Origin: Schizochytrium sp. TIO01
Lineage: Eukaryota; Protista; Bigyra: Labyrinthulomycetes
Length of the DNA: 64,000 bases
Direction: 5' to 3'
Assembly (NCBI GenBank): GCA_004764695.1
Contig: SMSO01000035.1
Span: forward strand, 2,232,001 to 2,296,000
This document shows positions 25,316 through 43,008 of the stretch, piece by piece. A program made the translations under genes and the position numbers. How positions within the stretch are numbered: the first letter of the stretch is position 1; each line of letters starts with the position of its first letter. The notes under the pieces were generated by a model. The model saw only the letters and a program-made list of their open reading frames with translations. It was not told the DNA's origin and ran no database searches.

Positions 25316-26584
25316 ATGGCGGAGGCGACAGCAGGACCGCAAGGCGTTCAGGTGTCCACAACTCGTATTTCTGCGCAAGATCAACAGCGCCGCAGTACGA
25401 ACGCAGCGGACGCACTGGTCTCATCAGCACCATGGCCACCTTCTTTCCAGCAGGCAGGCCAGCCAGATATGGTCTTGGCCGTCCAGAAAGACGCCTATTA
25501 TCGCCAAAAAGTTCGCGAGCAATTTCTGAGTGCATTTGATGTTTTATTGGAGCCCTACCAATCTGTAGTAGTCATGCCGGAAGTGAAACTGTTGGCAGAA
25601 TTGACATACTTTATGCTCACAACTGGCCAAGACAAGCAGACTCTTGGTGAAGAATACGTGGATATCATTCCAGTCGTAAGAGACAAGCTGAGGAATTCTT
25701 GGGATCTTCCACGCAAGCTTCAGAAATTAGCACTGCTTTTCTTTGGCGTTATTGCGCCGTATATGGTTCAAAGAATTGAAAGCGGAGGCTGGAAGTCCCT
25801 CGCGGTACTCTTTCAGAAACCCATGACAGCAGCAGAACGGGCTGCAGAAATGCGCAGGAAGATGCTTGAGCGTGCACGTCAACAGACACCGGCGGCTAAT
25901 GCGGGCTCGAATGGGCAAAACGGATCTTCGCAGATTGACATTGATGCACCAAAACCAAATTTGCGGCAACGACTTGTTGATTTTTACACTGCAAATCGTG
26001 AGCGCATTCTCTGGCTTCTGAGCTGGTCAGAGTTTCTTTACAAGGTTCACTTGGCAATATTTTATTTGCGTGGAACTTTTTATGAACTGCCTAAACGACT
26101 GGCTGGATTCCAGTATGTGTTTTCTCGTGTACCAAAGTCTGACAGGCCATCGTATAGGATCTTGGGTTGGTTTATTCTGGCGCAACTGGCTATTGAGGCA
26201 GCCCCCGCTGTACGTCACTCATTTCAAACCCTTCTTTTTTCCTGGGGAGTCCTTGCTAAGCGGCCTAATGAATCTGGGGAAGGCGATGCAGATTCCAAAG
26301 ACCGTGACGAAATCGTACCATCCTTACCTACTGCTGACAGTGCCTCACAAGACCTCGAAGATCTTGATCTCGTAGTTCTTCGTGACAAAAAACACGAACG
26401 AGGAATGGAACATATTAAATGTGGCATTTGTTTGAGCCCAGTCGAAAATGGTGCATGTCCCCCGTGTGGACATATGTACTGCTACGAACATATTGTCGAG
26501 GCAGTGGCAGTGAAAAGCGAGTGCCCGCTCTGTCGTCAAGCATGTACCCCATCTGATATAATGTGTGTTTACTTCACTTTGTAG
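25316..26584 (+). CDS. PEX10: Peroxisome biogenesis factor 10 (Pex2/Pex12 N-terminal domain plus RING finger)
   Basis: AGQPDMVLAVQKDAYY, QTLGEEYVDI, HLAIFYLRGTFYELPKRL, and a C-terminal RING CGIC...CPPCGHMYCYEH...CPLCR. Confidence 0.93.
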   Translation: MAEATAGPQGVQVSTTRISAQDQQRRSTNAADALVSSAPWPPSFQQAGQPDMVLAVQKDAYYRQKVREQFLSAFDVLLEPYQSVVVMPEVKLLAELTYFMLTTGQDKQTLGEEYVDIIPVVRDKLRNSWDLPRKLQKLALLFFGVIAPYMVQRIESGGWKSLAVLFQKPMTAAERAAEMRRKMLERARQQTPAANAGSNGQNGSSQIDIDAPKPNLRQRLVDFYTANRERILWLLSWSEFLYKVHLAIFYLRGTFYELPKRLAGFQYVFSRVPKSDRPSYRILGWFILAQLAIEAAPAVRHSFQTLLFSWGVLAKRPNESGEGDADSKDRDEIVPSLPTADSASQDLEDLDLVVLRDKKHERGMEHIKCGICLSPVENGACPPCGHMYCYEHIVEAVAVKSECPLCRQACTPSDIMCVYFTL

Positions 26585-27219: not shown

Positions 27220-28419
27220 TTACTTGCTTTCAGTAGTTGCGTTGGATGGAGGAGGTGTGGCTGCTGAAGAGGTTGGCATAGGAGGCGCTTCAAGCATTAC
27301 TGTAGGTTCTGGGAAGCCAAATGCACCAACAATTGGAGAAGCTCCCATGGGAGACCCAGGGATCTGCGGCATCATCAACCCTCCCGCGGGATACATAAAA
27401 TGGGGCGCAGAGCCGTAACTAAACCCAGTTGCAGCTGATGGTGATCCTGGAATGACTGTGGGGGATCCAGTTGCCATCATGTTCGAGAGTGACTGTTGGG
27501 TCATATAGTAAAGCTGGCTAGGCTGGAACATCATCTGCGGAGAGCCAGCATATTCACCGTTGACAGGTTGCGACAAGGAAAGCATTTGCATGTTTGCCAT
27601 GAGATCAGGCGGGAAATTCGGAGGAATTGGAAAGTTCGCTCCACCAATATTATTCTCCTCCAAGAGTGAAAGAGGACATTGCTGAAACCAGTGCGAATCG
27701 GGTCCCCCGCCCTCTTTGCCACAAATCTTGCACACATAACCTACTTTAGGAGGTTGAAAACTCTTTTTGCCAGATCTTCCCTTGGAAGCATCTGACATGA
27801 ACGGGTGAAGATGATGCTGATGAGCAAAGCCACCATGGAGATTGTTCATGTGAGAAGGGTGGTGTTGGTGATGGCGATGGTTCCCCATTCCGTTAGCCAT
27901 GCCCATTTGATCTGGGTATTGAAAGCCATGTCCTCCATTGAAGTTCGTATTCTTTGCTGAGGGAGCTGCACTATTTCCGTTCCAACCAGGAGGGAGCTCA
28001 CCTTGACGTTGAGGGCACAACTGGAACCAGTGGGAGTCTGGCTCGCCACCAGGCTTGCCACAAACCTTGCAGGTGTAGCCCGCCTTTGGTTTTGGTTTTT
28101 TCTGAGACGTATTTGCGTCCGTCTGCATATTGTCAAATTGGTTGTTTGCATGAATCTTGGCATTGGCATTGTTTCGATTCCGCGACCGGGACCCATGGGG
28201 TCCGTTTCCTGAGTGGAAGTCGTGTCTTGCAAGCCTTCCGCGGCTCGGAATGTGAGCTACCGGCTCGTCGACCGGAGCATCGGTTGTGCTATCCCCGTCC
28301 GTCGATGCATTAATCTCAAACTCCATATCCTTCCCGTTCCCGTACATGGGGTCGTTCGTGTCGATTGAAGACCGACCGGACTTTGATTCTAGTTTGTCCA
28401 ACGCGCGCGCTTCCTCCAT
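27220..28419 (-). CDS. Low-complexity protein with two extended zinc knuckles (CX2CX9HX4C), probable RNA-binding protein
   Basis: PKAGYTCKVCGKPGGEPDSHWFQLCP (28015-28071) and PKVGYVCKICGKEGGGPDSHWFQQCP (27676-27732), resembling RBBP6/Mpe1-type knuckles. N/H/Q/M/P-rich linkers. A TTTAG candidate splice acceptor lies 12 nt upstream of the ATG. Confidence 0.8.
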   Translation of the reverse strand: MEEARALDKLESKSGRSSIDTNDPMYGNGKDMEFEINASTDGDSTTDAPVDEPVAHIPSRGRLARHDFHSGNGPHGSRSRNRNNANAKIHANNQFDNMQTDANTSQKKPKPKAGYTCKVCGKPGGEPDSHWFQLCPQRQGELPPGWNGNSAAPSAKNTNFNGGHGFQYPDQMGMANGMGNHRHHQHHPSHMNNLHGGFAHQHHLHPFMSDASKGRSGKKSFQPPKVGYVCKICGKEGGGPDSHWFQQCPLSLLEENNIGGANFPIPPNFPPDLMANMQMLSLSQPVNGEYAGSPQMMFQPSQLYYMTQQSLSNMMATGSPTVIPGSPSAATGFSYGSAPHFMYPAGGLMMPQIPGSPMGASPIVGAFGFPEPTVMLEAPPMPTSSAATPPPSNATTESK

Positions 28420-29410: not shown

Positions 29411-31814
29411 TGTTTGTGGTTTGGCTTTTCGATTATGTTTTTGAAAAGGCTTTTTCCCCTTTTCGCCCCTATATTTGAAGGCAAAGAAAGAAAGAAAAAA
29501 AGAGAGAAAACTACTTTTGTTTGGTCGCTCGGAATGGCCCAATCCAGCCCGGCCTGCGCAAGCCTTCGAGGGAGCGGGGCGTCGCCGCGGGGAGGGGTCG
29601 CTGACCGGCGTGCGTGTGCCTCGCTGGCCCGCGCGGGGAGGGCTGCAATCTGGGCTTCGTCGGTCCCTGCGGAGCCTGTAGCGGTCTGGAGTCTGCGCTG
29701 CGCCTTTGAGACCAAATTCAAATTATTCTCTCTTCTCAATAATTCAAAGAAGAACTTCAATCGTAATGATTTCTTTCATCTCTTTCATTCATTTCTATCT
29801 TTCTATAACTCAGTTAAAGAAGAGTCACTGATCCTCATAACAAGGATAAGAACAGTTATAGTAGAAGAGAATAAAGAGTAAATTTATACTAAATGAATTG
29901 AAAAGTCGGTACCTCTCTCTCTTTACTCCTTTTCTTTCTTCTTTCTTTCTTTCCTTTCTCTCTATAGCGCCATATATCTCTTACTATAGGCCTCCGATTC
30001 TCCCAAGATGGGACGAGGCCTCCGCGATTCTCCCACTGGGCCCTTCCCTCACACCAACTTGTGGAACTGGGTCGCCTTCCCTGTAGGGAACGGCTGCTTC
30101 GCACTCCACTCGGTACAATACCCCCACTGGACATAAATTGGACTCGGAGTTATTATTTTGCATAAAGTTTTTGAAAAAAGTGTGATGCTATTAGGTACTC
30201 TATGAGTCGGAGAATAGTGCTCGAGTTACTCCGGTACCTCCGTGCGCTGTGCAGATACAACGGCTCTTTGAAAGGAGGGCTCTAAAATGATGGATGGGTA
30301 CAGCACCTAGGCATAGAGTAACAGGTAGCAGAGGCAATAGGAGTTTGGAGCCTGCCTATAATATTAGCGCGAGATCGCACGATTGTTTACTGGTTTCGGC
30401 ATTGGGCGAGGATATATATGTACAGCTTCGTGGCTCTAATGTTGCGAGACTGCATGAAATATATGCTGAGCTCAGGCAGTGATACCGAGCTATCAGCAGA
30501 ATGGAATCAAAAGATGTAACAAAGTGATGGCTTTCTTGGATGGATATCAAGAAGGAGCACTTCGAACCTTGTAATAAAAGGCTAAAGAGATAGTAGCCGT
30601 GTGAACCTATTTCTAATTATGAAAAAAAAGTAGGTACTTCAAGAGTAGACCTACTACGTTAGCCGCTAATACCGGCACTGAGGCAGGCTTGCGAAATGCG
30701 ATCTAACCTGAATGAGTGGGCTATCTTGATGTTGTATGTTTGTTCCTTGGTGTACTGATAGTGCTGATACAGGCCTTGCTATATTATGTTGGATTTTATA
30801 GATGAGGTTAAAAAAAAAAGATAAAAAAAAGATAAAAAAGATAAAAGAAACCATTTTTTATTAGCTATTCGAGATGCTGCCCTTTTGTTGAGGTAGTTGT
30901 TGAGCACATGTGTACAAAGTTGTGTCACTTGCATAGCCGGATCTAAGTAATTACGAGTCAATCATTCTTAGCGCGAGGATAAAATCAGAGCGTTCTCACA
31001 GAGCAGAGCAAAAGAACCTGATGGAATACAGGAGGTATTGATTATTGCATTTTTCGTGTCTTGGCACATATTCCTAAATGAAACCTATGGTACTAGGCCT
31101 ACAATGGTGTTGGGCACAGGTGCTGCTAGCAGGATCCATTGATGCATTTATGCACTCCAAGCTTGAAGTGCGTAGGCTGATCACTCATATAACTCATGTT
31201 TTCTCCTTCCATAAACTAGGATGAATAAATTTGAAGAGAGGAACCTGTATCAAAGAAAAGGGTTATATATGGAGACGTTAAGAGAAGTTGTCCAATTTAT
31301 AATAACCTCACTTCAAATGCCCTGGGCAATACATGTTGAACAGAATACGGTAATATCTGGGTTTTCGCTGTCATTTTGTCACGTTAATATATTTTTATTA
31401 ACTTTTTTAAAAAATTTAAATTAAATTAAAAACAAAAACAAAATAAAAGACCCGTTACGGTGTTTCCCTTTATATTCATGTATGTTCCACAAGGTTTGCA
31501 TCCACCTGCGATACAAGAGTCGTGGCCACTTACATGACAATAAGCTGAAACACTTGGTCCAACGTGTAATAAAGCTTGGGTTACCATCCTACATAAAGAA
31601 CTCTTAGATGTGTACTATTTATCTATGGGTCAAAATAGAGACTCAGAAAGTTGGAAAGAAGACAAACAACACATTCTAGCGGACAAATTTAGTGCTCCTC
31701 TACTAGCTCCTTAGTACTACTTCTCTCAGCAAGAATAGAAACAACAGGAGTAGGATCAGTAGCAACAAAAAGGTCTTTCCCATCCGTGGCATTCGCAGCA
31801 ATCAAAATCTACCG

Positions 31815-31839
31815 CGCTCGCTCGGTGGGCGAGCGAGCG
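31815..31839. repeat. Perfect 10-bp inverted repeat (hairpin) upstream of the NCKX-VSD gene
   Basis: CGCTCGCTCG-gtggg-CGAGCGAGCG. Confidence 0.85.
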
Positions 31840-32168
31840 GGTGGAGTAGGTCCTTCAGAGGAACTGTACTCTGTTTGAAGGTCAAGGTCGTACTTCCCAA
31901 GGCTTATCTTGCTTTCTCTGAAACCTGTAGTCCTTCTGACTTTCACAACGTCAAGTAGTCTCGCCAAGGCAAACATCTACGCATTCAGTGAATTCAATCA
32001 AGAACCATTCAAGAGCAAGACTTCGCCTGAACTTCAATTCGCTAGACTCAATACAAAGCTTCACGAAACCTCTTTGAGTCCTCAAGAGGTAGAAACTACG
32101 ACATTTTAACAGAGAAAGCCTCTGATCGGATTGCTTGTAGAGGGCGAAGGGGGTTCCCATCTCTAAGC

Positions 32169-34367
32169 ATGAGGTCTGCTCTGTCTTCTGCGCTTGTTGC
32201 TCCAATGTCAAGACAAGCTGTGCATCCAACAACAGACATGAGCTCGCGCAAAGGTATGCTTCGCCGGACTCTTCCCCGATCAAACTCCAAGTCTTGGTCA
32301 ATGAGAAAACGTCGCAGGCATGCTCACTATCGATTTTCTAGAAAGCACCTCCTGAAGTTGCAACTTATGCTTTTTTGTATGGTTGCCTTGTACACATTGA
32401 TGCCAAGTGGTTCAACTTTGTGGGGCGCTTCTGATGATTTTGAGTCAGACTTCCACTCAACTTGGGGGCGGTTTTTAACAGAGGATTCCAATACGACAAG
32501 CTCATGCAGCTCTTCCTCATCAACAACATCAAATTCAACAGAGACTTCAGGTGGAGAATTCCCAGATGACTTTTTATCTTACGAACAGAAAGCCCACGGA
32601 GGCATCATTGTTCACATTTTTCTTATCTTTTACATGTTTATGGGTCTAGCTATTGTTTGTGATGAGTATTTCGAGCCTTCGCTGGAGATCTTATGTGAAG
32701 ATCTTCACCTGAAGGAAGATGTCGCTGGTGCAACATTTATGGCGGCGGGCGGCTCAGCACCCGAACTTTTCTCTAGTATCATTGGAGTTTTTGTAGCCAA
32801 AAGCGACATTGGATTTGGTACGATTGTAGGCTCAGCTACATTCAACGTCCTCTTCGTCATTGCTGCCTGTGCCTTTGTGACTGACAATCTGAGTCTAAGC
32901 TGGTGGCCGCTGACGCGTGATTGCGTCTACTACTGCGTTTCAATCGTTGTTCTTGTCTCTTGCATCATTGACCAGGCTGTGACAGCAGTTGATGCAACGA
33001 TTTTACTCATCATGTACGCCATATATATCACCATCATGTACTTTAATGAGCGCTTGGAGATTTACGTGACGAAAAAAGTCGAGGATGCTCAAATCCCGCG
33101 GCAAGGCTGGCGCTTGAAGCTCGAGCATGCACTGGACTCTCGCTTCTTTAATTACTTCATCTACATCATCATAGTACTCAATATCACTACTATATTTTAT
33201 GAGATGGCAAACGATGAAACGAAAGCCACTAACATCATCAATAGTGTGTGCTCAGCTCTCTTTATCACTGAAATGGTGGTCAAGATTGCGACGTTTTCTT
33301 TCTTTGGATATTGGCAGAACCCGGGGAATGCATTTGATGGCACTCTTGTTATTCTTATACTGGTTGAAGTAATTCTTTCTTCCTCAAGTTTCTCAGGTGG
33401 CCTTCGTGTTCTTCGCGCGTTTCGCTTCTTCCGTGTTGCTCGAGTCTTCCGCCTTTATATGGCTTCATTGGTTGAGAAGATTGATGCCGAGACGCAGACA
33501 TGTAGTGAGGACTGGGCGATGCTTGAACTGGCTGAAAAAATGACTTTTGAGGAGGCATCTCAATATGCGCTTCCTTTTGCTACACGCTCTGCCGCTGCAG
33601 TCGCACCGCATCACCGTCTTTCTCTGCGTGGCTCATCTCTGACTGAAGAATTGAAGGCAGAAGGTATTATCAAAGATGCTGAGCCCACAGAGGACAACGA
33701 CAAGGATGTCCGAGCCAGTAAAGTTTCATTCGACGATGATGATGACGATGATGATGGGCCGAGCAATCCATTTGAGCTTCCGGACGGAGGCCCCGTAGAT
33801 TTTGTACTGTGGCTGATAGCTTTTCCTTTGAGCTTCTTCATGTTTCTCACCATTCCCGATTGTCGGAGGCCAATCTTCAAGCGCTTCTACATGCTCACTT
33901 TTTTTATGTGCATTGTTTGGATTGCGCTGCTGGCTTATGTTATGGTTTGGATGGCGACAATCTTTGGGGACTTCTATGGAATTCCGGAGCCAATAATGGG
34001 ACTGACCCTTCTGGCTGCAGGCACGAGTATCCCTGACTTGCTGTCTAGTATTGCTGTGGCAAAGCGAGGATTCGGAGACATGGCTGTCTCGAGTTCAATC
34101 GGTTCAAACATTTTTGATATCTTGATTGGCCTTCCGGTACCTTGGTTTATCTACACGGTCTTTGTTGAGCGGGGTGGAAGCGTTGAGATCCAGTCCGAGG
34201 GGATTACCATCATGGTATTGACTCTCTTTCTGATGGTTGCAGCTGTTGTTTCAATCATCCACTGGAGCAACTGGGTCATGACCAAGAAGCTTGGAGTAGC
34301 AATGGTGGTCCTATACTTTCTATTTGTTGCTGAAAGCCTTATTCTTGAAATCTTGAAGGACTGTTAG
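32169..34367 (+). CDS. K+-dependent Na+/Ca2+ exchanger (NCKX/SLC24 family) with an inserted S1-S4 voltage-sensing domain
   Basis: Alpha-1 repeat DVAGATFMAAGGSAPELFSS...GTIVGSATFN; alpha-2 repeat GLTLLAAGTSIPDLLSS...GDMAVSSSIGSNIFDILIGLP; poly-Asp before the second TM bundle. Central loop contains FFNYFIYIIIVLN (S1), LFITEMVVKI (S2), GYWQNPGNAFD (S2-S3) and LRVLRAFRFFRVARVFRLY (S4). Confidence 0.93.
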   Translation: MRSALSSALVAPMSRQAVHPTTDMSSRKGMLRRTLPRSNSKSWSMRKRRRHAHYRFSRKHLLKLQLMLFCMVALYTLMPSGSTLWGASDDFESDFHSTWGRFLTEDSNTTSSCSSSSSTTSNSTETSGGEFPDDFLSYEQKAHGGIIVHIFLIFYMFMGLAIVCDEYFEPSLEILCEDLHLKEDVAGATFMAAGGSAPELFSSIIGVFVAKSDIGFGTIVGSATFNVLFVIAACAFVTDNLSLSWWPLTRDCVYYCVSIVVLVSCIIDQAVTAVDATILLIMYAIYITIMYFNERLEIYVTKKVEDAQIPRQGWRLKLEHALDSRFFNYFIYIIIVLNITTIFYEMANDETKATNIINSVCSALFITEMVVKIATFSFFGYWQNPGNAFDGTLVILILVEVILSSSSFSGGLRVLRAFRFFRVARVFRLYMASLVEKIDAETQTCSEDWAMLELAEKMTFEEASQYALPFATRSAAAVAPHHRLSLRGSSLTEELKAEGIIKDAEPTEDNDKDVRASKVSFDDDDDDDDGPSNPFELPDGGPVDFVLWLIAFPLSFFMFLTIPDCRRPIFKRFYMLTFFMCIVWIALLAYVMVWMATIFGDFYGIPEPIMGLTLLAAGTSIPDLLSSIAVAKRGFGDMAVSSSIGSNIFDILIGLPVPWFIYTVFVERGGSVEIQSEGITIMVLTLFLMVAAVVSIIHWSNWVMTKKLGVAMVVLYFLFVAESLILEILKDC

Positions 34368-34567
34368 TTACTCAGATACGTCCCTGTCTATATGTACTCA
34401 CCTTCGCACATCTATTCACAGACAACTGATGGATTGAGTCCACAGAATTCGTATTGCGCACAATTTTTTCCTTATTACCAAAAGAATAACAGAAGTACTA
34501 TATATACGCCTCGCACGAAAAGAGAGGGAGTGATAGAATCACCGGAAAGGACCTTTAAAGATGAAGA

Positions 34568-34610
34568 GCAACAAGTTGACAAAGCTTGTGCAACAAGTTG
34601 ACAAAGCTTG
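34568..34610 (+). repeat. Short tandem duplication (22-bp period)
   Basis: GCAACAAGTTGACAAAGCTTG occurs at 34568-34588 and 34590-34610. Confidence 0.85.
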
Positions 34611-34689
34611 CCCGCTTCCCGCAAGGCCGCGATAGCTGCTTAAGTAGCATTAGTTAACGATATCACATTCATTTAATCCAAGTATTGCA

Positions 34690-35130
34690 ATTCATGTTTC
34701 GGGTACATCTAGTAGTCTTTTCAAGTTGAGCGGAGCAGCCAATATTTTAACGACAGCGATTCGTACAATGCTTTCTTCGTACGATATTTTGGGTTGGCTG
34801 TTCAATTATCAAATGGATGAATATTTCCCAAATTCTTCAACGGTTCTACTAATCCCCGAAGCTAATTTTTCAAAAGAAGTATCTCGCGATCTAAATTCCA
34901 CCATATTACTCTTGCAGTTGAATTTCTAGTTATCACATCTCCCCCAAAGGTTCTCCTAATGTCAGGCCCCAATGAAAATATTCGACTTCCTCACTTGCAT
35001 TTCTTAACCGTCCAATCGTACTTTTACATGCACAAAGTAAATGTATATCATAGCAACTGAGTTAATGTCTTGGCCTGCTTTAGAAAGGCAGGTTGTTTGA
35101 TTGATTGCCTTCAAGTCAAGCTAACCCACA
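34690..35130 (-). pseudogene. Decayed RI-type LRR gene relic
   Basis: Minus-strand fragments LDL/EGNQ (about 35120, frameshifted), AFLKQAKTLTQL (35089-35054), SLGPDIRRTFGGDVITRNSTARVI (34975-34904), GLVEPLKNLGNI and LNLKRLLDV. Confidence 0.4.
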
Positions 35131-36187
35131 AGCGAAAATGTACTTTGCTTTCAATAGCGCTGATTTAATCAAGGAGCCATTCTGGATAGGCCGGAGGATA
35201 GGCCCTTTCTAGAACAAGACCGAGAGTACACCATCGAGTCATGCGTCCACAAGAAAACTTGAACATCTGACAACCTAGCTTTGCTTCGACTTGTGCAATG
35301 CCTTTTGACTAGCATTCACGGGGGTCTCGACTTCTTACAGAGAGTGCATCTCCATGATCCACTTGAAACTAGGATAGACCTTTAGAAATCAAGGATGATC
35401 AGCATGTATTCACTTGAACAATGTAGAGAACCTTTCGGTAACTACTAGAAGCTCAATTAGATGGCGTCCTAGGGTGACCACAAGTATTGTAATAATATAT
35501 CCATCGAAAGATAGATTGATTGTTTAACCAAAATAGGCCTATCAAAAGAAATGGAGTTCTTAGAGATACCTCTATCCGGGTAATACCTATAATATAAATA
35601 AACAAAGAATAGAAGGAGAAGAAAAAAAGAAAAAGGAAATGGAAAGCCTGACCATAACCAAAAGCTTTGCGAGTCAGAGCATCACATTGCACGGCGCCTC
35701 GTGCCGCAATAAGACGTATTGAAGAGGGTTTAGGACGACTTAAAGACCAAAGCTTTTAGCGGTGACGTCCGGCTCTGTAGAGGTCTCAATATTTGAAGGC
35801 CTAGGAGACTAGAGGAGCAGCGCTCACTAAGTCAACGTTTTGAGGTCACTCACCTCCTGGCTGGAGGGTCCTTAGGACATAACGCTCCTTCGTCAGAGGC
35901 ATATTAGGAAACCCTCGTGAAGGCGGTGCGGTAATAAGCTGTGTGTTCTAGAGCCAAAACAGGCGTTGTATCCGAAATCCGGCTGGAACACGTTATCGCG
36001 AGATCGTTTTTAAAGAGCTTGCCTGCCCCAAATTCAGAAGCTGAGGGGCCGCGAGGGTATCAATCACAAGATACTCACACCATACAAGAGTGCAAATTTG
36101 ACAAGTTTCACCTTGGTTTGAGTGAAGTCGTCAAGAGTTTGATTTAATACTGTTTTCCGCAGTTGCTAAATCCTTTTTTCAAACACC

Positions 36188-39100
36188 ATGGTCACCTGCG
36201 AAGAGGTAGAAAAGGTCGTCCATGTGGTCTACCAAGGAGGAGCCGCAGAAAAGGGTCGCAGGGAAGCATTAGCGTGGCTTCAAAATTTTTCTACTACTCC
36301 GGAGGCATGGGCAATTTGGCTAGAGTTAGTAGGCTCACCGACCAACCAAACGCAGTTCTTTGCTGCCAACATGCTTTACGCGAAGGTTCAGAAGGAATGG
36401 TATGATCAGCCCGATGCAACGAAACAGGATATCCACCAGCGTATTCTTCAGGTGGTTCGTGAATATGTCCGCGATGACTCGCAACGCCTTTGGAACAAAT
36501 CTCTGTGCCGCCTTTGTCTGGCATTGGCAAGAATGACAGTTCAAACGCCCTCAATCCTTGAAGCCTACATGAACGAAGTATGGAACTTGCTTCGTGGAGG
36601 CCTTGAGCAAGCAGCATCCAACTACTCTCCATCTGCAGATCGTGCTCTCTTCGTTGCTACGGAGCTCTTGATTGATTTACCTGAGGAAAAAGAGGCCGAA
36701 GAGTCCCCTGAAAGCGCGGTTATCTCTGACACAAACCCAGGTGGAATCGGTAAGCTCATGAATGCCATGCTTGGACAGGTTGTGGAGGCTGTGACGCAGC
36801 TCATGATGAAGGTTGATAAAGCTTCAGTCCACGCACGTGCTTTAGAGTGCCTTCACGCCTGGGCTCCTCTTGGCGTTGATGTCCCAACACTTGCTCGCTG
36901 CAACCTGCTGAGACCCATGCTGATGGCTCTAAATACTTGTCAGGAGCTGACAGTCTTAGATATGGCTTCCCAAGCACTCATTGCCTGCGTTAAAAAAAAC
37001 TCATTGGAAGAGGAGCTCGGGCAACCTGAGACACCTGAGACGCTAGCAAGCTTGGATCAACTCGTGGAAGGAGTTTTAGCTACTCAGTCACGGCTCGCCG
37101 CAACTTGCGACGCGTCGGGGTCGAACAATGGTATTAGTGGTGAAAAACTACCTCTTGAGCGCGATCCAAGCACACAAGAAGATGTCGCGCTCAGTTTGTG
37201 CAAGCTCACTGTAGCGGTGGCTGAAAGTCAAATTGATAGAATAATTCCGGGTTCCACACCACAACTTCTTGGTCTTGTAGACATGGTGATGTCGCTTACT
37301 GCCCACCCTAGCCACTCAGTTTCAATCCTCACTTTGAATTTTTGGCTTCTCATACAAGATTACGAAATGGCACGTCGACACGAGTCTTTGCGTGAAACCT
37401 GCTACTTCAAATTGCTGGAAGTTCTTCTTTGCCAGTCTAAATTAAATGAAGATGCTAGCTCGGGCTATGAGGAAGACATATTCGATGAGATTCAGAGTTT
37501 TCGCAATAGTGGCGATGGCGTAAAAGACGTTTTCTATATCACCATGTACGTTTTAGGTCCTCAGTACGTCGAATGTATGCTTTCTGTTTTGCGAAATACG
37601 CAAGATTGGCGGGATTTTGAAGCAGCAATGTTTGCACTGAGCTCTGCCGCTCGAGTGATCAATGAACAAGCTGTGCGCCCAGACCCGCGCAGTGCTAATT
37701 TACGTGGTATTGTTGAAGTTGTCTTGCAAGAGCTCTCAACTTGGAACCTTCTTGGTGCGAACGGAGCCACACTACGCTCTGGAGTGCAAATGATTGGCAA
37801 CTTTGCCTCCTTCTTGGCCCGTATGGATCTCGCACTAATTGAACGTAATTTAAACTACGTTATTTTTGCTCTTCCATTCTCCGATCCAGTCAGCAAAACT
37901 GCTGCGGAGGCCTTTGGCCGCGTTTGCATTGCGAGTCGGCTGGAGCTCGCGCTTCATCCTGATGCCGTGAAAACCTTAGCGGCCGGTATTGAAAAGGCAT
38001 ACCAGTCCTTTCCAACGGACCCCACGAAACAAGAAGATCAAAGCTTTGCTGCAACAAAGTCATCTTCTTTCCCAGTCGATGCACGACTCAAAGCAGTAGA
38101 AGGCATTGCCCGTGTTGCTTCATGCATGAAGCTAGATGCGTGTCAAGAAACACTTGTAGTCTTGTTGAATCCGAGCCTGGACCGTTTGACTAAAGCTGTA
38201 GACGGAGTTGACTGCAATATTGCCGCACAGGAGCTGCGGGTTTTATGTTGCGCGGTAAAGTTTCTGGATGTGAATACCAAAACTTTGGCTTCTCCAATGG
38301 ACCACCCTGTGGCCGCTATCCTCGCCCAGATTATGCCAATTTTGGAGAAAATTACTGCTATTCCTGCTCTGCAACATGACACAGAAGTGGTCGAGGCATT
38401 ATACTCTCTTATATCTGCGTCATTTTTTTCAGCAAAAACTGTCCTGGCTCAACATCTAGAGTCCTTACTGACAGCTGCTGTAAAGCAATTTCGAATTACA
38501 TGGTCCCCATGCTGTATTACATGTGTTGGGAAAGCTGTGGAGGTTTTCGTTCCATCCCAGCCAGGGTCCGAAAGTGGCTTTCAGCATTTGTTTGGCCGCC
38601 TCACGGAAAACATGGTTGAATGCATTCGCGATGGGCATGCTGTAAACGATCCTGTTATTATCTCCACATTTTTTGATACTGCACTAACATTCCTTATATT
38701 CTGCCCCGGAGCAATTTTCTCGTCAGCTCCTACATCGTCCGAGGATAATGTCCCTTCTGAAAGTACGCTTGATGCCTTCCTTCAAATTATGGCCAAGTGT
38801 GTTTCAAGTGATGAAGTAGAGTCTCTACGATCAGTTGCTATCTTCATCACGTCTCTCATGAGTCGCCTCGGAGGAGATGCGACAACTGCAGCAGCCGCAA
38901 TGGGGAACATGGAGGCTGCATGTAAGGCCCGTGATCTATCTCAATACAGACCATTCTTCGATCAAGCCCTTTCCCGCAATGGTCGCTACTTAGTTGGTGA
39001 AATAATTCTCGCATTGGCTTCAACCTGCCCACCAACGCCCCTAGCTAAACTAGCTCAAGGTCTCGCAGATCTCACGGTCCGTTATCCTCAACTGGTACAA

Positions 39101-39334
39101 GAATCTGTTTATGCAACATTCATGCAGAACCCACCTATTTTTGCACGCCTTAGCGATGCCGATAAGGAGTGCCTTGTAACAACTATTCCTTACATGGCAC
39201 AAGGCGTTGGCACCAAAGGTAAAGAGGCCTTTGAGGAATTTGCACGCTTGTGCCGTAAGCAGACAAAATCTGAAACGTACCAGAAGCTCCTAAATGATCT
39301 GCGCATTGCCCCCGAAGTCATTGAAATTGCTTGA
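36188..39334 (+). CDS. Importin-beta family karyopherin, importin-13/transportin-3-like
   Basis: 1048 aa of HEAT-like helices. N-terminal ALAWLQNFSTTPEAW...QFFAANMLYAKVQKEW; SILTLNFWLLIQD; WRDFEAAMFAL. Confidence 0.85.
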   Translation: MVTCEEVEKVVHVVYQGGAAEKGRREALAWLQNFSTTPEAWAIWLELVGSPTNQTQFFAANMLYAKVQKEWYDQPDATKQDIHQRILQVVREYVRDDSQRLWNKSLCRLCLALARMTVQTPSILEAYMNEVWNLLRGGLEQAASNYSPSADRALFVATELLIDLPEEKEAEESPESAVISDTNPGGIGKLMNAMLGQVVEAVTQLMMKVDKASVHARALECLHAWAPLGVDVPTLARCNLLRPMLMALNTCQELTVLDMASQALIACVKKNSLEEELGQPETPETLASLDQLVEGVLATQSRLAATCDASGSNNGISGEKLPLERDPSTQEDVALSLCKLTVAVAESQIDRIIPGSTPQLLGLVDMVMSLTAHPSHSVSILTLNFWLLIQDYEMARRHESLRETCYFKLLEVLLCQSKLNEDASSGYEEDIFDEIQSFRNSGDGVKDVFYITMYVLGPQYVECMLSVLRNTQDWRDFEAAMFALSSAARVINEQAVRPDPRSANLRGIVEVVLQELSTWNLLGANGATLRSGVQMIGNFASFLARMDLALIERNLNYVIFALPFSDPVSKTAAEAFGRVCIASRLELALHPDAVKTLAAGIEKAYQSFPTDPTKQEDQSFAATKSSSFPVDARLKAVEGIARVASCMKLDACQETLVVLLNPSLDRLTKAVDGVDCNIAAQELRVLCCAVKFLDVNTKTLASPMDHPVAAILAQIMPILEKITAIPALQHDTEVVEALYSLISASFFSAKTVLAQHLESLLTAAVKQFRITWSPCCITCVGKAVEVFVPSQPGSESGFQHLFGRLTENMVECIRDGHAVNDPVIISTFFDTALTFLIFCPGAIFSSAPTSSEDNVPSESTLDAFLQIMAKCVSSDEVESLRSVAIFITSLMSRLGGDATTAAAAMGNMEAACKARDLSQYRPFFDQALSRNGRYLVGEIILALASTCPPTPLAKLAQGLADLTVRYPQLVQESVYATFMQNPPIFARLSDADKECLVTTIPYMAQGVGTKGKEAFEEFARLCRKQTKSETYQKLLNDLRIAPEVIEIA

Positions 39335-39443: not shown

Positions 39444-42400
39444 TCATCCAATTTGGCTTTGTCTACTCGATAGACTTTTCCTCCTGTTTGATAGAGCGGT
39501 ATTAGTCATTTGCAATGTTTCCTCATCACTATTATCATCGTCGTCATCATTAGGATTGTTATCATCATCATCGGAGTTGTCCCTGCGATTCTCAGTATAG
39601 TACGAAGATGAAGCAGGAATTCCCTCTTCTTCCTCTTCCTCCTCTTCCTCCTCTTCTTGACTATTTCCATCAGCCTCGTCTGAGTAGTATTCGTCGTTTT
39701 CTGATAGCGGCGACTCTGATCGATTATCCTCTTGGCTATTGCCCTCATCTTCATCATCTTCGTCATCATCTTCGTCATCATCGTCTTCATTATCTTCATC
39801 ACCTTCGGAGTCTGACTCACGAGACTCCGCTCCTTCATCTTGAGCAGTTTCAGCACCATTGGTACCTTGCAGATGAGCTAGTGGCTGTCTTGCTAAGCTT
39901 CCCTCTTTAGCTCGAGCTTCCTCTTCTACTTTTCGTTGCTCCTCCTCTTCCTTTTCTATCCGTCGAGCCTTCATTTCATCATTTCGACGCTTCAACACTG
40001 AACGAGCTTCTTTGCTCAACTTTTCCTGCATAAGCTGAGAGTTTTGGACTTCAATTTCCTGCAAGAGATCCTCTGGGACATTGACATCTTCAGCAGCTTC
40101 AAATGCTTTTTGCAGAAGGCGCAGTATGCAACGATTATAAGTTGTCAAAATTTCAGATAAAAACCCTGGCTGATTCAAAATTTCAGAAAGCTGTTTGTCT
40201 GGAAGAAGTCCCCCAAGGTATGTCTCTATCCCGGCATGACGAACTCGCTGCTCTTCTTCTTCTTCTTCTTCTTCTTCTTCTTCTTCTTCTTCTTGCTTCT
40301 TGGTCTGGAGTTGCTCAAATTTATTTCCGACGGTAGTTTGTCCACCATTTGCATTTGAAAGTAAGGATGCTGCTGCAGAAACAGCAGGTTCAACACTAAT
40401 TTGAGCAGCATTGATATTTTCATGTTGAGTCGCTTGTGGAGAGATTTTATTTTTCTGTCTTCCAAACCCTAGCCATCGGGATTTGGATTTACGCTCCCCA
40501 CTAGCCGAGGTTTTGCTGGGTAATATGGCTGTTGCAACATCATCTGCTACTGATCCAAGATCTGTAGAGATCTGCCTCGTAGAAAACGACTCTCGCCGCG
40601 CCATCCGAGAAATTAGCGCTGAGTCTGCTGCCTTGGTGTAGTAGTCATTCGGTTGGCCTTGTTCCGGTCCACCAATTGTTTTGCGAAGTAGTACATAAAC
40701 TACAGACGCAAGAATCGTTAGGTTTGCTTGGGCTCGCTTCTCTGGTTTCTGAACAATGCCCATTTCCCATGGTCGACATAGCACAGGTAGAAGGCATCGT
40801 ATGATGACAAATGTCGATAAAATTAACTTTGAGCGCTCGTAGTCAAACTCCGGTTTGATTAATTCCTCGTCGGGAAGACTTGGGTTGCTGTTTGGTGCAC
40901 TTTGAGTAATCTGTTCAGAGATAGAGGCTTTTGTTGCTGCAGTTTGTTCCTTTTCACGGATCATCCATCTCGTGTATCCAGATGCGCCAAAGTCTAAAGA
41001 GTTATGTTCAATTGGAAACAAAAACCCATCTGGAAAAACTGCACCATCTGTAACAAGTTTTCCTAAGAAGCTAGCGATAGCTGCAGGAAATGGTGGTTTA
41101 TCTGTTTCTATCGAACGCAATAGAGACTCAAACACTCCTCGTACACGTACTTTTAGTCGAAGTCTTGCGAGATCAGTTTCATCTACCTTTTCCCCATTTG
41201 CATTCACTGGGGCGGTCTTTTTGCCACGAAACATACGCATACCTTTGGTTCCAAATGCACTAAGTCCCCCACTGGGGTTAAGGTTCAGGTCTTTTTTCGA
41301 AGCAATATCCGTAAGCTGGAGAGCCAGAACTTGCGATGTCCATGAGCGCACGAGGTCTGCAAACCAAATCACTGCCTTATCCATATCTTTTCGCTCTGCT
41401 TGCGATATGATTGCACGGTGCATCTCAGCATCGCGACGAATACGGGCCAATGCAATGAATACAGTTGCAATAGCGCGGAAAAGAGGCTTGCCTTTGAGAA
41501 TCTGGTCTGCCGGTGGTGCTGTGACGCCCTCTTTCCGCCATCTATATAATGGTTTTCCACTACCGTATACAATAACTTTAAGCACTTTTCGTGATCGCTC
41601 TGCTTCCTCGACTTCCTTCTTCTCATCCTTTGCTGCAACTTTATCAGCCTCGTCGTCACTGACCTGCAGCAAATCAGTGTCATCATCCAAAAGTTTTTCC
41701 CATATCGTGCGATTTTCCTCATCAGGAGGTTTTGTGACTTTGATGGAATCAATCTTACTTGTTGTATTTGATAATGCCTTTTCTGTTGTTGCTCCCGGTT
41801 GCTTGGCTGGTGATGATCCAGAATGCTCCTCATTTACAGGATTTCTTTCTGGAGCTGATGGATACTTACCTGATAAACTTGTTTGATTCGGTTGAAGTGA
41901 TGTCAAGCTACCATGAGAAGCATTTTGCTGTAATAATGGAGACTCACTTCGAATGCCTCCTGCTTGCGATAGTGGTAGCTTCAATAATCTGTTTTCAAGC
42001 GCTTCAAGTAGAGCCTTGTTTTGACCAACAATATGATCTTCGAGTCTCCGCTGAAAGTCTTCTCTTTGCCGTAGCTCCATGTGAGCCTGCAACTGATTGT
42101 CCAGTCCATTGAGAACTTCGAGCATCGTATTCTGCTGTATCTGCAATTGCTTTCGAAATCGGGCAATAGTTTCATTCCTTGTGCGAAGATGTTGTTGTGC
42201 TATTGCTCGCTGATTCGTTTGAAGTTCGTTCTTAATGTTGCGATGGCGTCGGCCATGACGGTCTTTTAAATCTCTTTTTCTCCTTGATCCCCCACCCTTA
42301 TCTTTTTGATGCCGTCTTTGACTTTTGTCTCTTCTGTGTTGTTTCTTTGGAGTTTCTACTGTGCTAGAACTTGATTCAGAGTTGTCCAATAAAAATGTAT

Positions 42401-42650: not shown

Positions 42651-43008
42651 GGATAGTGCATGAAGCCCCAAATTTGTTGACTGGATTGCTGATTCCTTGG
42701 TTGCTTTAAAATATGAAAAACTATTGGTGAACAAAGAGCCGTTAACTCGTTTATTAAAGTTACTTTTGACCAAGACTGAGACAACACGAAATACAAGTAG
42801 TCTCGACAATACTATGTAAAAACGAAACTTGAGAGTGCATAATGTACATGAATGGTTGCAAACGAATTTTTAGGTTTTGGACGCTTGGGAGCAACTGCCT
42901 GGCATTTCAATGCAGCTTGACACTAATGCAAATATGGTTGGAGAATGAAAAGTTTTTTTGTAGAATGTGATGTTTCATTTTAAGTCATGGTAATTCAGAT
43001 TCATCATA

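What the first reader, a model, noticed from the sequence alone, without database searches (positions are those of the whole stretch)
32169..34367. NCKX-type Na+/Ca2+-K+ exchanger with a complete voltage-sensing domain in its cytosolic loop: candidate voltage-gated calcium exchanger
Seen in sequence: one uninterrupted 732-aa ORF has both Ca2+/cation-antiporter alpha repeats (GATFMAAGGSAPE; GTSIPD...GSNIFD). Between them (about nt 33126-33458, aa about 320-430) is a four-helix module. S1 is FFNYFIYIIIVLN; S2 is LFITEMVVK (FxxExxxK charge-transfer pattern); the S2-S3 segment is GYWQNPGNAFD; S4 is LRVLRAFRFFRVARVFRLY, with Arg at 413/416/419/422/425/428. No S5-P-S6 pore follows; the chain resumes a soluble loop, poly-Asp and the second exchanger half. 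Established knowledge: the NCKX central loop is cytosolic and regulatory, and a VSD has both ends cytosolic, so the insert preserves topology. The Asp of GSNxFD is the residue tied to K+ dependence in NCKX. Pore-less VSDs are known to control the Na+/H+ exchanger SLC9C1 and voltage-sensing phosphatases. The module lacks Hv1 hallmarks (S1 Asp, S4 RxWRxxR), arguing for a sensor rather than a proton channel. Inference: an independently evolved voltage-regulated Ca2+ extruder, possibly for Ca2+ signalling in flagellated cells. I know of no description of this architecture but could not search.
Basis: partly seen in the sequence, partly recalled or inferred. Interest (0 to 1): 0.93.

Follow-up and report, generated by a model that had tools for sequence, protein, structure and literature searches.

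The report
Calcium exchanger with built-in voltage sensor
A marine protist (thraustochytrid) gene encodes a sodium/calcium-potassium exchanger with a complete, strongly conserved channel-type voltage sensor inserted in its middle; about 100 relatives in several protist groups share the design, and I found no paper describing it, so it may be a second kind of voltage-controlled transporter.

Summary
Window 32169-34367 (+) is one intronless 732-aa ORF. Pfam finds two Na_Ca_ex repeats and Ion_trans positions 2-109 of 241, which is S1-S4 with no pore.

- **Transcription:** two transcript-like contigs from separate studies cover the whole ORF colinearly, with no joints.
- **Structure:** AlphaFold2 models a 10-TM exchanger core (NCX1, Z 43.6). 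The four-helix bundle superposes on Cav1.2 VSD-IV (rmsd 1.8 Å over 117 residues).
- **Family:** 100 of the 120 best homologues carry the same insert. Named ones are thraustochytrids, euglenids and a cercozoan; a pelagophyte model is truncated; an Atlas cluster is mostly haptophyte. On an exchanger-core tree they form one group (SH-aLRT 91, three odd rows left out).
- **Conservation:** across 70 members, S2 Glu, S3 Asp, six S4 basic positions and the Ca2+-site residues are invariant or nearly so.
- **Origin of the sensor:** it is most like domain II or IV of four-domain Cav/Nav channels.

Best reading: an NCKX-type Ca2+ extruder gated by membrane voltage. The polarity and the coupling route are unknown. 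Ten full-text searches found no description, and a 2023 Nature paper calls SLC9C1 the only known VSD-regulated transporter. Function is inferred only. The scan had noted this same stretch before, but not on other DNA.

The parts
31766..34730 (+). Extent of the transcript-like contigs (mRNA): a 5' leader of about 365-400 nt with no AUG, the CDS, and a 3' UTR of about 310-360 nt
   Evidence: X1 record 2 (2986 nt) covers 31805-34730 and X2 record 5 (2971 nt) covers 31766-34676. Both are colinear with no joints. The flanking intergenic DNA (30967-31634 and 34975-35642) is uncovered in all four runs; there is no ATG in 31766-32168.
32169..34367 (+). Complete intronless CDS, 732 aa: NCKX-type exchanger with an inserted voltage-sensor domain
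32340..32399 (+). N-terminal hydrophobic helix (aa 58-77), likely a signal peptide or anchor as in NCKX. A Ser/Thr-rich, disordered and probably extracellular stretch follows (aa 80-124).
   Evidence: helix 54-77; pLDDT below 50 for aa 80-124. PMC3667879 describes the NCKX signal peptide. This assignment is inference.
32580..33089 (+). Exchanger half 1 (TM1-TM5, aa 138-307), including the alpha-1 repeat
   Evidence: Na_Ca_ex; pLDDT above 90; NCX1 Z 43.6.
32718..32777 (+). Alpha-1 repeat signature (aa 184-203) with the Ca2+-site residue Glu199
   Evidence: D184 to E199 are largely invariant in 70 sequences; nearly identical to vertebrate NCKX3.
33090..33140 (+). Fixed-length helical linker from TM5 to S1 (aa 308-324, an S0-like helix)
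   Evidence: the N293-to-N338 distance is 42-51 residues in all 70 sequences; pLDDT 94-96.
33141..33212 (+). VSD helix S1 (aa 325-348): N338 is nearly invariant and E345 is acidic in 49 of 70
33222..33296 (+). VSD helix S2 (aa 352-376): N358 and E368 invariant, F365 (F60/Y10), K372 (67 of 70). These form the charge-transfer centre.
33321..33380 (+). VSD helix S3 (aa 385-404): D390 invariant, E400 in 67 of 70. It is preceded by the FGYW..NAFDG motif shared with Cav3 domain II.
33402..33470 (+). VSD helix S4 (aa 412-434): Arg at 413, 416, 419, 422, 425 and 428. Each of these positions is basic in 63-70 of 70 sequences.
   Evidence: model residues 309-430 superpose on Cav1.2 VSD-IV at rmsd 1.8 Å over 117 residues.
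33483..33515 (+). Conserved post-S4 motif D-A-x-T-Q-x-x-x-x-D-W (aa 439-449), a candidate coupling segment
   Evidence: T442 in 47 of 70, Q443 in 57 of 70, D448 in 43 of 70. Its function is inference.
33567..33728 (+). Disordered, length-variable cytosolic linker (aa 467-520)
   Evidence: pLDDT below 50; the S4-to-TM6 distance is 42-260 residues across the family.
33729..33785 (+). Poly-acidic run plus a GPxxPFExP-type motif directly before TM6 (aa 521-539). This is an ancestral NCKX feature.
   Evidence: also present in vertebrate NCKX3.
33792..34361 (+). Exchanger half 2 (TM6-TM10, aa 542-731), including the alpha-2 repeat
33999..34124 (+). Alpha-2 repeat (aa 611-652) with D623 (GTSIPD) and D650 (GSNIFD)
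   Evidence: T619, S620, D623, S646, N647 and D650 are invariant..

Best explanation
The gene encodes a plasma-membrane-type Ca2+ extruder of the NCKX (SLC24-like) branch of the Ca2+/cation antiporter superfamily. A complete, pore-less S1-S4 voltage-sensor domain has been inserted into its central cytosolic loop, directly after TM5.

Shown:
- The gene is one uninterrupted ORF, and transcript-like contigs carry it as one colinear piece.
- Both modules fold as expected.
- The insert keeps the exchanger topology and puts the VSD in the canonical orientation, with the S1 N-terminus and S4 C-terminus both cytosolic.
- The transport-site residues and the voltage-sensing residues (six S4 basic positions, S2 Phe/Glu, S3 Asp) are conserved across about 100 homologues from several protist lineages.

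Inferred:
- S4 moves with membrane potential.
- That movement switches Na+-driven Ca2+ (+K+) exchange on or off, adding steep voltage gating to the weak intrinsic voltage dependence of an electrogenic exchanger.
- The movement reaches the exchanger through the rigid TM5-S1 junction and helix packing, and/or through the conserved post-S4 segment that leads to the mobile gating helix TM6.
- In a cell that also has four-domain voltage-gated cation channels, this would time Ca2+ clearance to electrical events.

The polarity (activated by depolarisation or by hyperpolarisation) cannot be read from sequence. I hold the two as about equally likely.
For: - **Architecture:** Pfam gives Na_Ca_ex twice plus Ion_trans profile positions 2-109 of 241. 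Phmmer against the PDB gives Cav3 domain II at domain E 1e-12 to 1e-13, and NCLX, NCX1 and NCX_Mj for the exchanger halves.
- **Fold:** the AF2 model has pLDDT above 90 over the core and S1-S3, and pTM 0.74. VIA-align gives NCX1 at Z 43.6, rmsd 2.4 Å over 359 residues, and Cav1.2 VSD-IV at Z 14.5, rmsd 1.8 Å over 117 residues with 28% identity. For the VSD-only model (pLDDT 87), every listed Foldseek hit is a channel VSD, with TM 0.64-0.79.
- **Not an artefact:** colinear contigs of 2.97-2.99 kb from two studies have no joints, intergenic DNA is uncovered, and the leader has no AUG. 100 of the 120 best homologues have the insert.
- **Constraint:** E368, D390 and N358 are invariant. Each S4 basic position is kept in 63-70 of 70 sequences, and position 365 is always aromatic (F60/Y10). 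Exchanger residues E199, D623 and D650 are invariant.
- **Single origin:** on a tree built from the exchanger core only, the VSD-bearing sequences form one side of a branch (SH-aLRT 91).
- **The loop as a regulatory socket:** a paralogue in the same genome carries EF-hands in the same loop.
- **Excitable context:** the genome has three four-domain Ion_trans channels and 86 Ion_trans matches.
- **Precedent:** SLC9C1 shows that a VSD can gate a secondary transporter (PMC6052114, PMC10620092).
- **Topology:** NCKX2 has 10 TMS with a cytosolic loop between TMS5 and TMS6 (PMC3667879).
Against: - There are no functional data of any kind: no gating charge, flux or localisation.
- The S4-to-TM6 linker is long (42-260 aa in the family) and mostly disordered, so a simple lever on TM6 is doubtful.
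- The model's coordinates and PAE were not available, so no VSD-core interface could be examined.
- The three-chain docking test gave no verdict.
- TMEM266 has a VSD and no known voltage-controlled output (PMC13095418), so an intact VSD does not guarantee a gated effector.
- The runs used for transcript evidence are only guessed to be RNA, and they are assemblies, not reads.
- Two full-length VSD-less NCKX proteins (P0091, P0101) sit inside the clade, so the VSD is dispensable for at least some members.
Confidence: 0.65

Rival explanations
1. The VSD is a structural, targeting or oligomerisation module, for example for sorting to a membrane domain or for lipid or partner binding. It does not change the transport rate with voltage, and the protein behaves as an ordinary NCKX.
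For: TMEM266 is a conserved VSD protein with no known voltage-controlled output (PMC13095418). The S4-TM6 linker is long and disordered. VSD-less proteins nest within the family. The docking test gave no verdict.
Against: All six S4 basic positions, the S2 Phe/Glu and the S3 Asp are kept across 70 sequences that are only about 40-50% identical overall. That pattern is what selection for charge translocation predicts, not selection for a mere helical bundle.
Confidence: 0.15
2. The VSD responds to voltage, but its output is not the exchanger's turnover. It might control a binding partner through the cytosolic loop, or the exchanger core might act mainly as a Na+/Ca2+-sensing regulator of the VSD (a transceptor).
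For: A conserved post-S4 cytosolic motif (aa 439-449) and a long loop could be docking sites. First-stage notes list other pore-less VSD fusions in this genome (unverified), and several VSD-only Ion_trans matches exist. This suggests VSDs are used as general signalling inputs here.
Against: All transport-site residues of both alpha repeats are invariant and nearly identical to vertebrate NCKX3, which argues for real transport. The simplest target of an intramolecular sensor is its own host domain, as in SLC9C1 and VSP.
Confidence: 0.1
3. The VSD itself conducts ions, as an Hv1-like proton pathway or an omega-type leak. This would make a combined channel and exchanger.
For: Hv1 shows that a lone VSD can conduct, and Hv-type channels are common in marine protists (PMC10377628).
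Against: S4 has Arg at every third position with no gap and no RxWRxxR pattern. The aromatic plug residue at 365 is F or Y in all 70 sequences, and mid-S1 carries Asn338 rather than an acidic residue. The nearest VSDs in sequence and in fold are non-conducting Cav/Nav sensors.
Confidence: 0.06
4. The fusion is an artefact: an assembly chimera, two genes read as one, or a retained intron-like segment that is removed from the mature mRNA.
For: None was found. The only weakness is that the RNA status of the runs is a guess.
Against: Colinear contigs in four runs from four studies show no joints. The same architecture occurs in 100 homologues, including transcriptome-derived proteins from MMETSP and EukProt. 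The VSD is in frame and highly conserved, and the TM5-S1 spacing is fixed at 42-51 residues.
Confidence: 0.01

Closest known systems
NCKX / SLC24 K+-dependent Na+/Ca2+ exchangers (closest VSD-less sequence relatives found: vertebrate NCKX3)
   Same: It has two Na_Ca_ex repeats and alpha-1/alpha-2 signatures almost letter-for-letter those of NCKX3. It also has an N-terminal hydrophobic segment and an acidic run plus a GPxxPFxxP-type motif before TM6. Identity is 34-38% over 83-97% of the length. The model has the 10-TM CaCA fold.
   Different: A 4-TM voltage-sensor domain is inserted about 30 residues after TM5, where animal NCKX proteins have only a soluble loop. K+ dependence and stoichiometry are untested.
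SLC9C1 (sperm-specific Na+/H+ exchanger), called the only known transporter regulated by a VSD (PMC10620092, PMC6052114)
   Same: It is a secondary-active cation exchanger that carries a canonical, pore-less S1-S4 domain in the same polypeptide. The proposed logic, a voltage sensor gating a carrier, is the same.
   Different: The transporter superfamily differs (CaCA, not CPA/NHE). Here the VSD is inserted between the two inverted halves of the carrier, not appended after it. There is no cyclic-nucleotide-binding domain. The nearest VSD matches listed are Cav/Nav domains II and IV, and SLC9C1 is not among them. The family occurs in protists, not animals. The origin is therefore independent.
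Voltage-sensor domains II and IV of four-domain Cav/Nav channels (Cav3.x DII by sequence, Cav1.2 DIV by structure)
   Same: It shares the FGY..NP.N.FDG S2-S3 motif with Cav3 DII, the S2 F..E...K pattern, the S3 Asp and the S4 R-x-x repeats. Identity is 28-36%, and rmsd is 1.8-2.5 Å over about 117-124 residues. The family's VSD profile scores best on domain II in 78 of 103 four-domain channels and on domain IV in 22.
   Different: No S5-P-S6 pore follows. The domain forms its own clade: identity is 41-59% within the family against 36% or less to channels.
Voltage-sensing phosphatases (Ci-VSP/TPTE) and Hv1
   Same: They are pore-less VSD proteins whose sensor drives a non-channel output (VSP) or stands alone (Hv1).
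   Different: There is no phosphatase domain. The Hv1 S4 RxWRxxR pattern is absent, and Asn rather than an acidic residue sits mid-S1.
CaCA exchangers with regulatory modules in the central loop: NCX1 with CBD1/CBD2, and the EF-hand-bearing paralogue in this genome
   Same: The TM5-TM6 cytosolic loop is the place where CaCA exchangers accept regulatory domains. A paralogue at G000:C24:4636195-4638015 has EF-hands there.
   Different: Here the module is membrane-embedded and senses voltage, not a soluble Ca2+ sensor.

Membership tests
CaCA superfamily, NCKX (SLC24)-type exchanger | Two Na_Ca_ex (alpha-repeat-containing) halves | tested here: met
   PF01699 with 2 stretches, E 4.9e-52.
CaCA superfamily, NCKX (SLC24)-type exchanger | Alpha-1 GATFMAAGxSAPE with the Ca2+-site Glu, and alpha-2 GTSxPD plus GSNxFD with two Asp (by motif position: Glu188, Asp548 and Asp575 of NCKX2) | tested here: met
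   E199, D623 and D650 are invariant in 70 sequences, and the motifs are almost identical to vertebrate NCKX3. The NCKX2 numbering for Asp575 comes from PMC5749117; Glu188 and Asp548 are from my own knowledge.
CaCA superfamily, NCKX (SLC24)-type exchanger | 10-TM inverted-repeat CaCA fold | tested here: met
   NCX1 8sgt_A at Z 43.6, rmsd 2.4 Å over 359 residues; NCLX at Z 38.9; NCX_Mj at Z 24.5.
CaCA superfamily, NCKX (SLC24)-type exchanger | Closest non-fusion relatives are SLC24 members rather than NCX, CAX or CCX | tested here: met
   the first named VSD-less full-length animal hits are vertebrate NCKX3 (E about 1e-119); the next Atlas clusters are NCKX5 and NCKX4.
CaCA superfamily, NCKX (SLC24)-type exchanger | K+ co-transport (4 Na+ : 1 Ca2+ + 1 K+) | not testable with these tools
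   Asp650 is present, but NCX_Mj also has the equivalent Asp240 without K+ coupling (PMC5749117). Flux assays are needed.
Voltage-sensor domain of the voltage-gated ion channel superfamily | Four-helix S1-S4 bundle matching the N-terminal half of Ion_trans, with no pore | tested here: met
   profile positions 2-109 of 241; four helices; all listed Foldseek hits are channel VSDs, TM 0.64-0.79; rmsd 1.8 Å over 117 residues to Cav1.2 VSD-IV.
Voltage-sensor domain of the voltage-gated ion channel superfamily | S4 with at least 4 basic residues at every third position | tested here: met
   six positions (413-428) are basic in 63-70 of 70 sequences.
Voltage-sensor domain of the voltage-gated ion channel superfamily | Gating-charge transfer centre: an aromatic and an acidic residue in S2, and an acidic residue in S3 | tested here: met
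   position 365 is F in 60 and Y in 10, and E368 and D390 are present in 70 of 70.
Voltage-sensor domain of the voltage-gated ion channel superfamily | Voltage-driven gating-charge movement | not testable with these tools
   This needs gating-current or voltage-clamp-fluorometry measurements.
SLC9C1-type voltage-gated Na+/H+ exchanger | CPA-fold NHE transport domain followed by a C-terminal VSD and a CNBD | tested here: not met
   no Na_H_Exchanger or cNMP-binding hit. The VSD is internal, between the two CaCA halves. It may work like SLC9C1, but it is not a member.
Hv1 voltage-gated proton channel | S4 RxWRxxR signature and a mid-S1 acidic selectivity residue | tested here: not met
   S4 reads R-V-L-R-A-F-R-F-F-R-V-A-R-V-F-R with no Trp in register, and mid-S1 is Asn338 in 68 of 70. 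The S1 equivalence to Hv1 Asp112 was not checked by a direct alignment.
Voltage-sensing phosphatase | PTEN-like phosphatase and C2 domains after S4 | tested here: not met
   no such Pfam hit. The sequence after S4 is a linker and then exchanger half 2.

The most novel reading that the evidence does not exclude
This is the founding example of a second, independently evolved class of voltage-gated secondary transporter. It is an ancient protist family, found in stramenopiles, haptophytes, euglenids and cercozoans. A Cav/Nav domain II/IV-type voltage sensor is embedded between the two inverted halves of an NCKX exchanger and gates Ca2+ extrusion on the time scale of electrical signals. That would give excitable marine protists a voltage-timed Ca2+ clearance mechanism with no counterpart in animals.
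Probability: 0.55. Interest if true: 0.9.

Novelty: new variant of a known kind. Interest (0 to 1): 0.82.

Why it matters
Voltage sensors are textbook parts of ion channels. Outside channels, only voltage-sensing phosphatases, Hv1 and one transporter (SLC9C1) are recognised, and the 2023 structure paper calls SLC9C1 the only known VSD-regulated transporter (PMC10620092).

A large, conserved family of VSD-NCKX fusions would show that coupling a voltage sensor to a carrier arose more than once, and with a different geometry: inserted between the inverted repeats, next to the TM1/TM6 gating bundle. It would offer a second system for studying electromechanical coupling in an alternating-access transporter.

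It would also add a missing element to Ca2+ signalling and excitability in ecologically important marine protists, namely thraustochytrids, haptophytes, pelagophytes and euglenids. The NCKX core has close animal relatives, so the VSD could serve as a portable voltage switch for engineering exchangers. Public databases currently label these proteins as ordinary 'sodium/potassium/calcium exchanger'.

Tried and rejected
1. **Docking test.** I ran a three-chain docking test with exchanger half 1, exchanger half 2 and the VSD as partner. The result was no verdict (score 0.00). This is evidence neither for nor against contact, and the alignment was not used by the tool.
2. **Model coordinates.** I looked for coordinates or PAE to inspect the VSD-core interface and the S4 register. 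No files are exposed, so the modelled sensor state (up or down) and the coupling surface could not be read.
3. **Whole-library search with the VSD alone.** I hoped phmmer against 1.84 billion representatives would size the family. Four-domain channels sum four stretches and dominate the list, so no clean family count came out. It showed only that family members have 41-59% identity and channels have 36% or less.
4. **Literature.** Ten full-text searches and eleven look-ups in ten papers found no description of a VSD in an NCKX, NCX or CaCA protein. Subscription-only papers are not covered.
5. **Recent copy of a channel domain.** I rejected the idea that the VSD is a recent copy of a channel domain from this genome. 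The best in-genome VSD matches are only 26-36% identical.
6. **Asp650 and K+ dependence.** I rejected the claim that Asp650 proves K+ dependence (PMC5749117).
7. **Antisense ORF.** The antisense 116-aa TTG ORF at 31951-32301 lies over the 5' leader and CDS start. I treat it as a chance ORF and did not pursue it.
Full report
**1. The observation**

Window 32169-34367 (+) is a single ORF of 732 codons.
- Pfam finds Na_Ca_ex twice (E 4.9e-52).
- Between the two repeats, at aa 325-430, it finds Ion_trans matched to profile positions 2-109 of 241, which is S1-S4 without S5-P-S6 (E 1.3e-18).
- Phmmer against PDB sequences puts the T-type Ca2+ channels first. Their domain II aligns to aa 316-431 with domain E values of 1e-12 to 1e-13 and shares the FGY..NP.N.FDG S2-S3 motif.
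- The two exchanger halves match NCLX, NCX1 and NCX_Mj.

**2. Is it one real gene product?**

The window lies on contig C34 of a 64-Mb, 37-contig assembly. An earlier follow-up in the scan calls it a thraustochytrid. My closest named homologues agree: Hondaea fermentalgiana at 72% identity and Mucochytrium quahogii at 56%.

Logan contigs of four runs from four studies were laid on 30800-35800.
- X1 has one 2986-nt contig covering 31805-34730.
- X2 has one 2971-nt contig covering 31766-34676.
- Both are colinear with the genome and no joints were reported.
- The intergenic DNA on both sides has zero depth in all four runs.
- One contig of the upstream gene ends in a poly(A) loose end.

This island pattern is what transcript assemblies give. 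The runs are only guessed to be RNA, and contigs cannot show abundance. The 403-nt leader contains no ATG, so 32169 is the first AUG on the transcript. The VSD segment is therefore not spliced out, and an assembly chimera is excluded.

**3. Structure**

AlphaFold2 with a 70-sequence family alignment gives mean pLDDT 78 and pTM 0.74.
- The exchanger core and S1-S3 are above 90, and S4 is about 70-77.
- Residues 1-39, 50-58, 80-124, 436-444 and 467-526 are disordered.
- VIA-align places the core on human NCX1 (Z 43.6, rmsd 2.4 Å over 359 residues) and on NCLX (Z 38.9).
- It places model residues 309-430 on Cav1.2 VSD-IV (Z 14.5, rmsd 1.8 Å over 117 residues, 28% identity). CatSper, NALCN, Cav3.2 and Nav1.8 sensors follow closely.
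- The VSD folded alone (pLDDT 87) returns only channel VSDs among the listed Foldseek hits, with TM 0.64-0.79.

NCKX2 has 10 TMS, an extracellular C-terminus and a cytosolic TMS5-TMS6 loop (PMC3667879). A 4-TM insert in that loop keeps the exchanger topology and orients the VSD canonically. This last step is inference from established topology.

**4. A family, not a singleton**

Of the 120 best database hits, 100 carry the insert, at 36-72% identity to the query.
- Named members come from thraustochytrids, from euglenids (Keelungia, Urceolus, Petalomonas) and from the cercozoan Mataza.
- There is also a truncated gene model of the pelagophyte Aureococcus.
- An ESM Atlas cluster of 71 proteins is most often haptophyte.
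- Many members are transcriptome-derived (MMETSP, EukProt).

A tree built from the exchanger core only, with the VSD columns excluded, puts all 100 VSD-bearing sequences on one side of a branch (SH-aLRT 91). For that tree I left out three rows: P0102, a truncated model that still holds S1-S2, and P0091 and P0101, full-length VSD-less proteins nested in the clade that may be secondary losses. Vertebrate NCKX3 and the other VSD-less proteins lie on the other side. One ancient insertion is therefore the simplest history.

**5. Constraint**

Across 70 members that share about 38-71% overall identity with the query:

| Element | Residue | Conservation (of 70) |
|---|---|---|
| S1 | N338 | 68 |
| S2 | N358 | 70 |
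| S2 | position 365 | F 60, Y 10 |
| S2 | E368 | 70 |
| S2 | K372 | 67 |
| S3 | D390 | 70 |
| S3 | E400 | 67 |
| S4 | six basic positions, 413-428 | 63-70 each |

A seventh basic residue at 431 occurs in 39 of 70, though not in this protein. The transport-site residues E199, T619, S620, D623, S646, N647 and D650 are invariant, and both alpha repeats are almost identical to vertebrate NCKX3. Both modules are thus under the selection expected of working parts.

**6. Where the sensor came from**

A profile of the family's VSD scores highest on domain II in 78 of 103 four-domain channels and on domain IV in 22. Mean scores are 46.6, 71.9, 52.1 and 64.8 bits for domains I to IV.
- Identity within the family is 41-59%, against 36% or less to any channel.
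- In this genome the best VSD matches are 26-36% identical. They lie in three ORFs that each carry four Ion_trans domains.
- SLC9C1 does not appear among the 60 phmmer hits shown or the listed Foldseek hits.

The sensor is therefore an old derivative of a Cav/Nav domain II/IV-type module, acquired independently of SLC9C1.

**7. Anatomy relevant to coupling**

- The TM5-to-S1 junction has a fixed length (42-51 residues between N293 and N338 in all 70 sequences), is helical and is modelled with pLDDT 94-96.
- The S4-to-TM6 connection varies from 42 to 260 residues and is largely disordered.
- That connection keeps a short motif right after S4 (D-A-x-T-Q-x-x-x-x-D-W, aa 439-449).
- It also keeps an acidic run plus a GPxxPFExP-type motif right before TM6. 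The acidic run and that motif are ancestral NCKX features, also present in NCKX3.

I infer that coupling runs through the rigid N-terminal junction and helix packing, and/or through the post-S4 segment. Neither route could be tested: no coordinates were available and the docking test gave no verdict.

**8. Context**

- This is the genome's only VSD-NCKX. At least seven other CaCA paralogues lack a VSD match, and one has EF-hands in the same loop. The loop therefore acts as a socket for regulatory modules.
- The genome has 86 Ion_trans matches, including three four-domain channels and several other pore-less, VSD-only matches. First-stage notes list other VSD fusions (unverified).
- This organism therefore has the parts for electrical signalling.

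**9. Mechanism and rivals**

The best reading (0.65) is a Ca2+ extruder whose turnover is gated by membrane potential. The polarity is open.
- If depolarisation activates it, Ca2+ clearance would switch on together with voltage-gated Ca2+ entry.
- If hyperpolarisation activates it, as in SLC9C1, the carrier would be silenced during depolarisation. That would allow Ca2+ transients to rise and prevent reverse-mode entry.

The rivals are:
- a voltage-insensitive structural or targeting role (0.15);
- a voltage sensor with an output other than transport (0.10);
- a conducting VSD (0.06);
- an artefact (0.01).

**10. Novelty**

Ten full-text searches and eleven paper look-ups found no description of a VSD in any CaCA exchanger. 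Recent reviews and the SLC9C1 structure papers list only channels, Hv1, VSP, TMEM266 and SLC9C1 (PMC13095418, PMC10651576, PMC10620092).

Databases already hold the proteins under automatic names: 'Sodium/potassium/calcium exchanger 1' for Hondaea, and an Atlas cluster named 'Ion transport protein/Sodium/calcium exchanger protein domain-containing...'. The sequences are therefore public, but the architecture appears to be unremarked.

I class it as a new variant of a known kind (the VSD-coupled non-channel effector). Interest is high because it would be a second, independent, widespread and structurally different voltage-sensor-transporter fusion.

Noticed in passing
G000:C24:4636195-4638015 (locus L002:1-2115): A CaCA/NCKX-like paralogue in the same genome carries EF-hand pairs (EF-hand_7, E 3e-24) in its central loop. 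This is the position where the gene under study carries the VSD.
   Followed up: partly
G000:C6:1961942-1966192 (L011), G000:C4:441284-446716 (L012), G000:C30:1545311-1549087 (L013): Three long intronless ORFs (1915, 2245 and 1809 aa) each have four Ion_trans domains. They are four-domain Cav/Nav-type channels in a thraustochytrid.
   Followed up: partly
G000: C13:2892606-2892974, C33:4244561-4244983, C24:397755-398102, C30:5297517-5297984, C30:3016926-3017498: These are further Ion_trans matches covering only the S1-S4 part of the profile, inside ORFs of 400-923 aa. They are candidate pore-less VSD proteins, possibly the VSD-PDE, VSD-RGS and VSD-ABCG fusions noted by first-stage readers.
   Followed up: no
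window 34425 and 34568 (3' UTR): The window has a 22-nt tandem duplication near 34568 that is single-copy in the contigs of three runs. Two of those contigs carry about 81 extra letters at 34425. These look like strain-level 3' UTR polymorphisms.
   Followed up: no
window 31766-32168: The roughly 400-nt 5' leader of the transcript contigs contains no ATG in any frame.
   Followed up: yes
proteins P0091 and P0101 (database hits): Two full-length NCKX-like proteins without a VSD nest inside the VSD-bearing clade on the exchanger-core tree. They may be secondary losses of the sensor.
   Followed up: partly
window 25316-26584 (+), 27220-28419 (-), 36188-39334 (+), 39444-42809 (-): The neighbouring genes are a Pex2/Pex12 RING peroxin, a zinc-knuckle protein, an importin-beta-family protein and a 1121-aa ORF with no Pfam match. 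There is no functional link to the exchanger.
   Followed up: partly
protein P0003 (NCBI CAK9005813.1) and P0002 (GBG25547.1): Public annotations name these VSD-bearing proteins as ordinary 'Sodium/potassium/calcium exchanger 1/2 (retinal cone...)'. The annotation does not mention the voltage-sensor insert.
   Followed up: no
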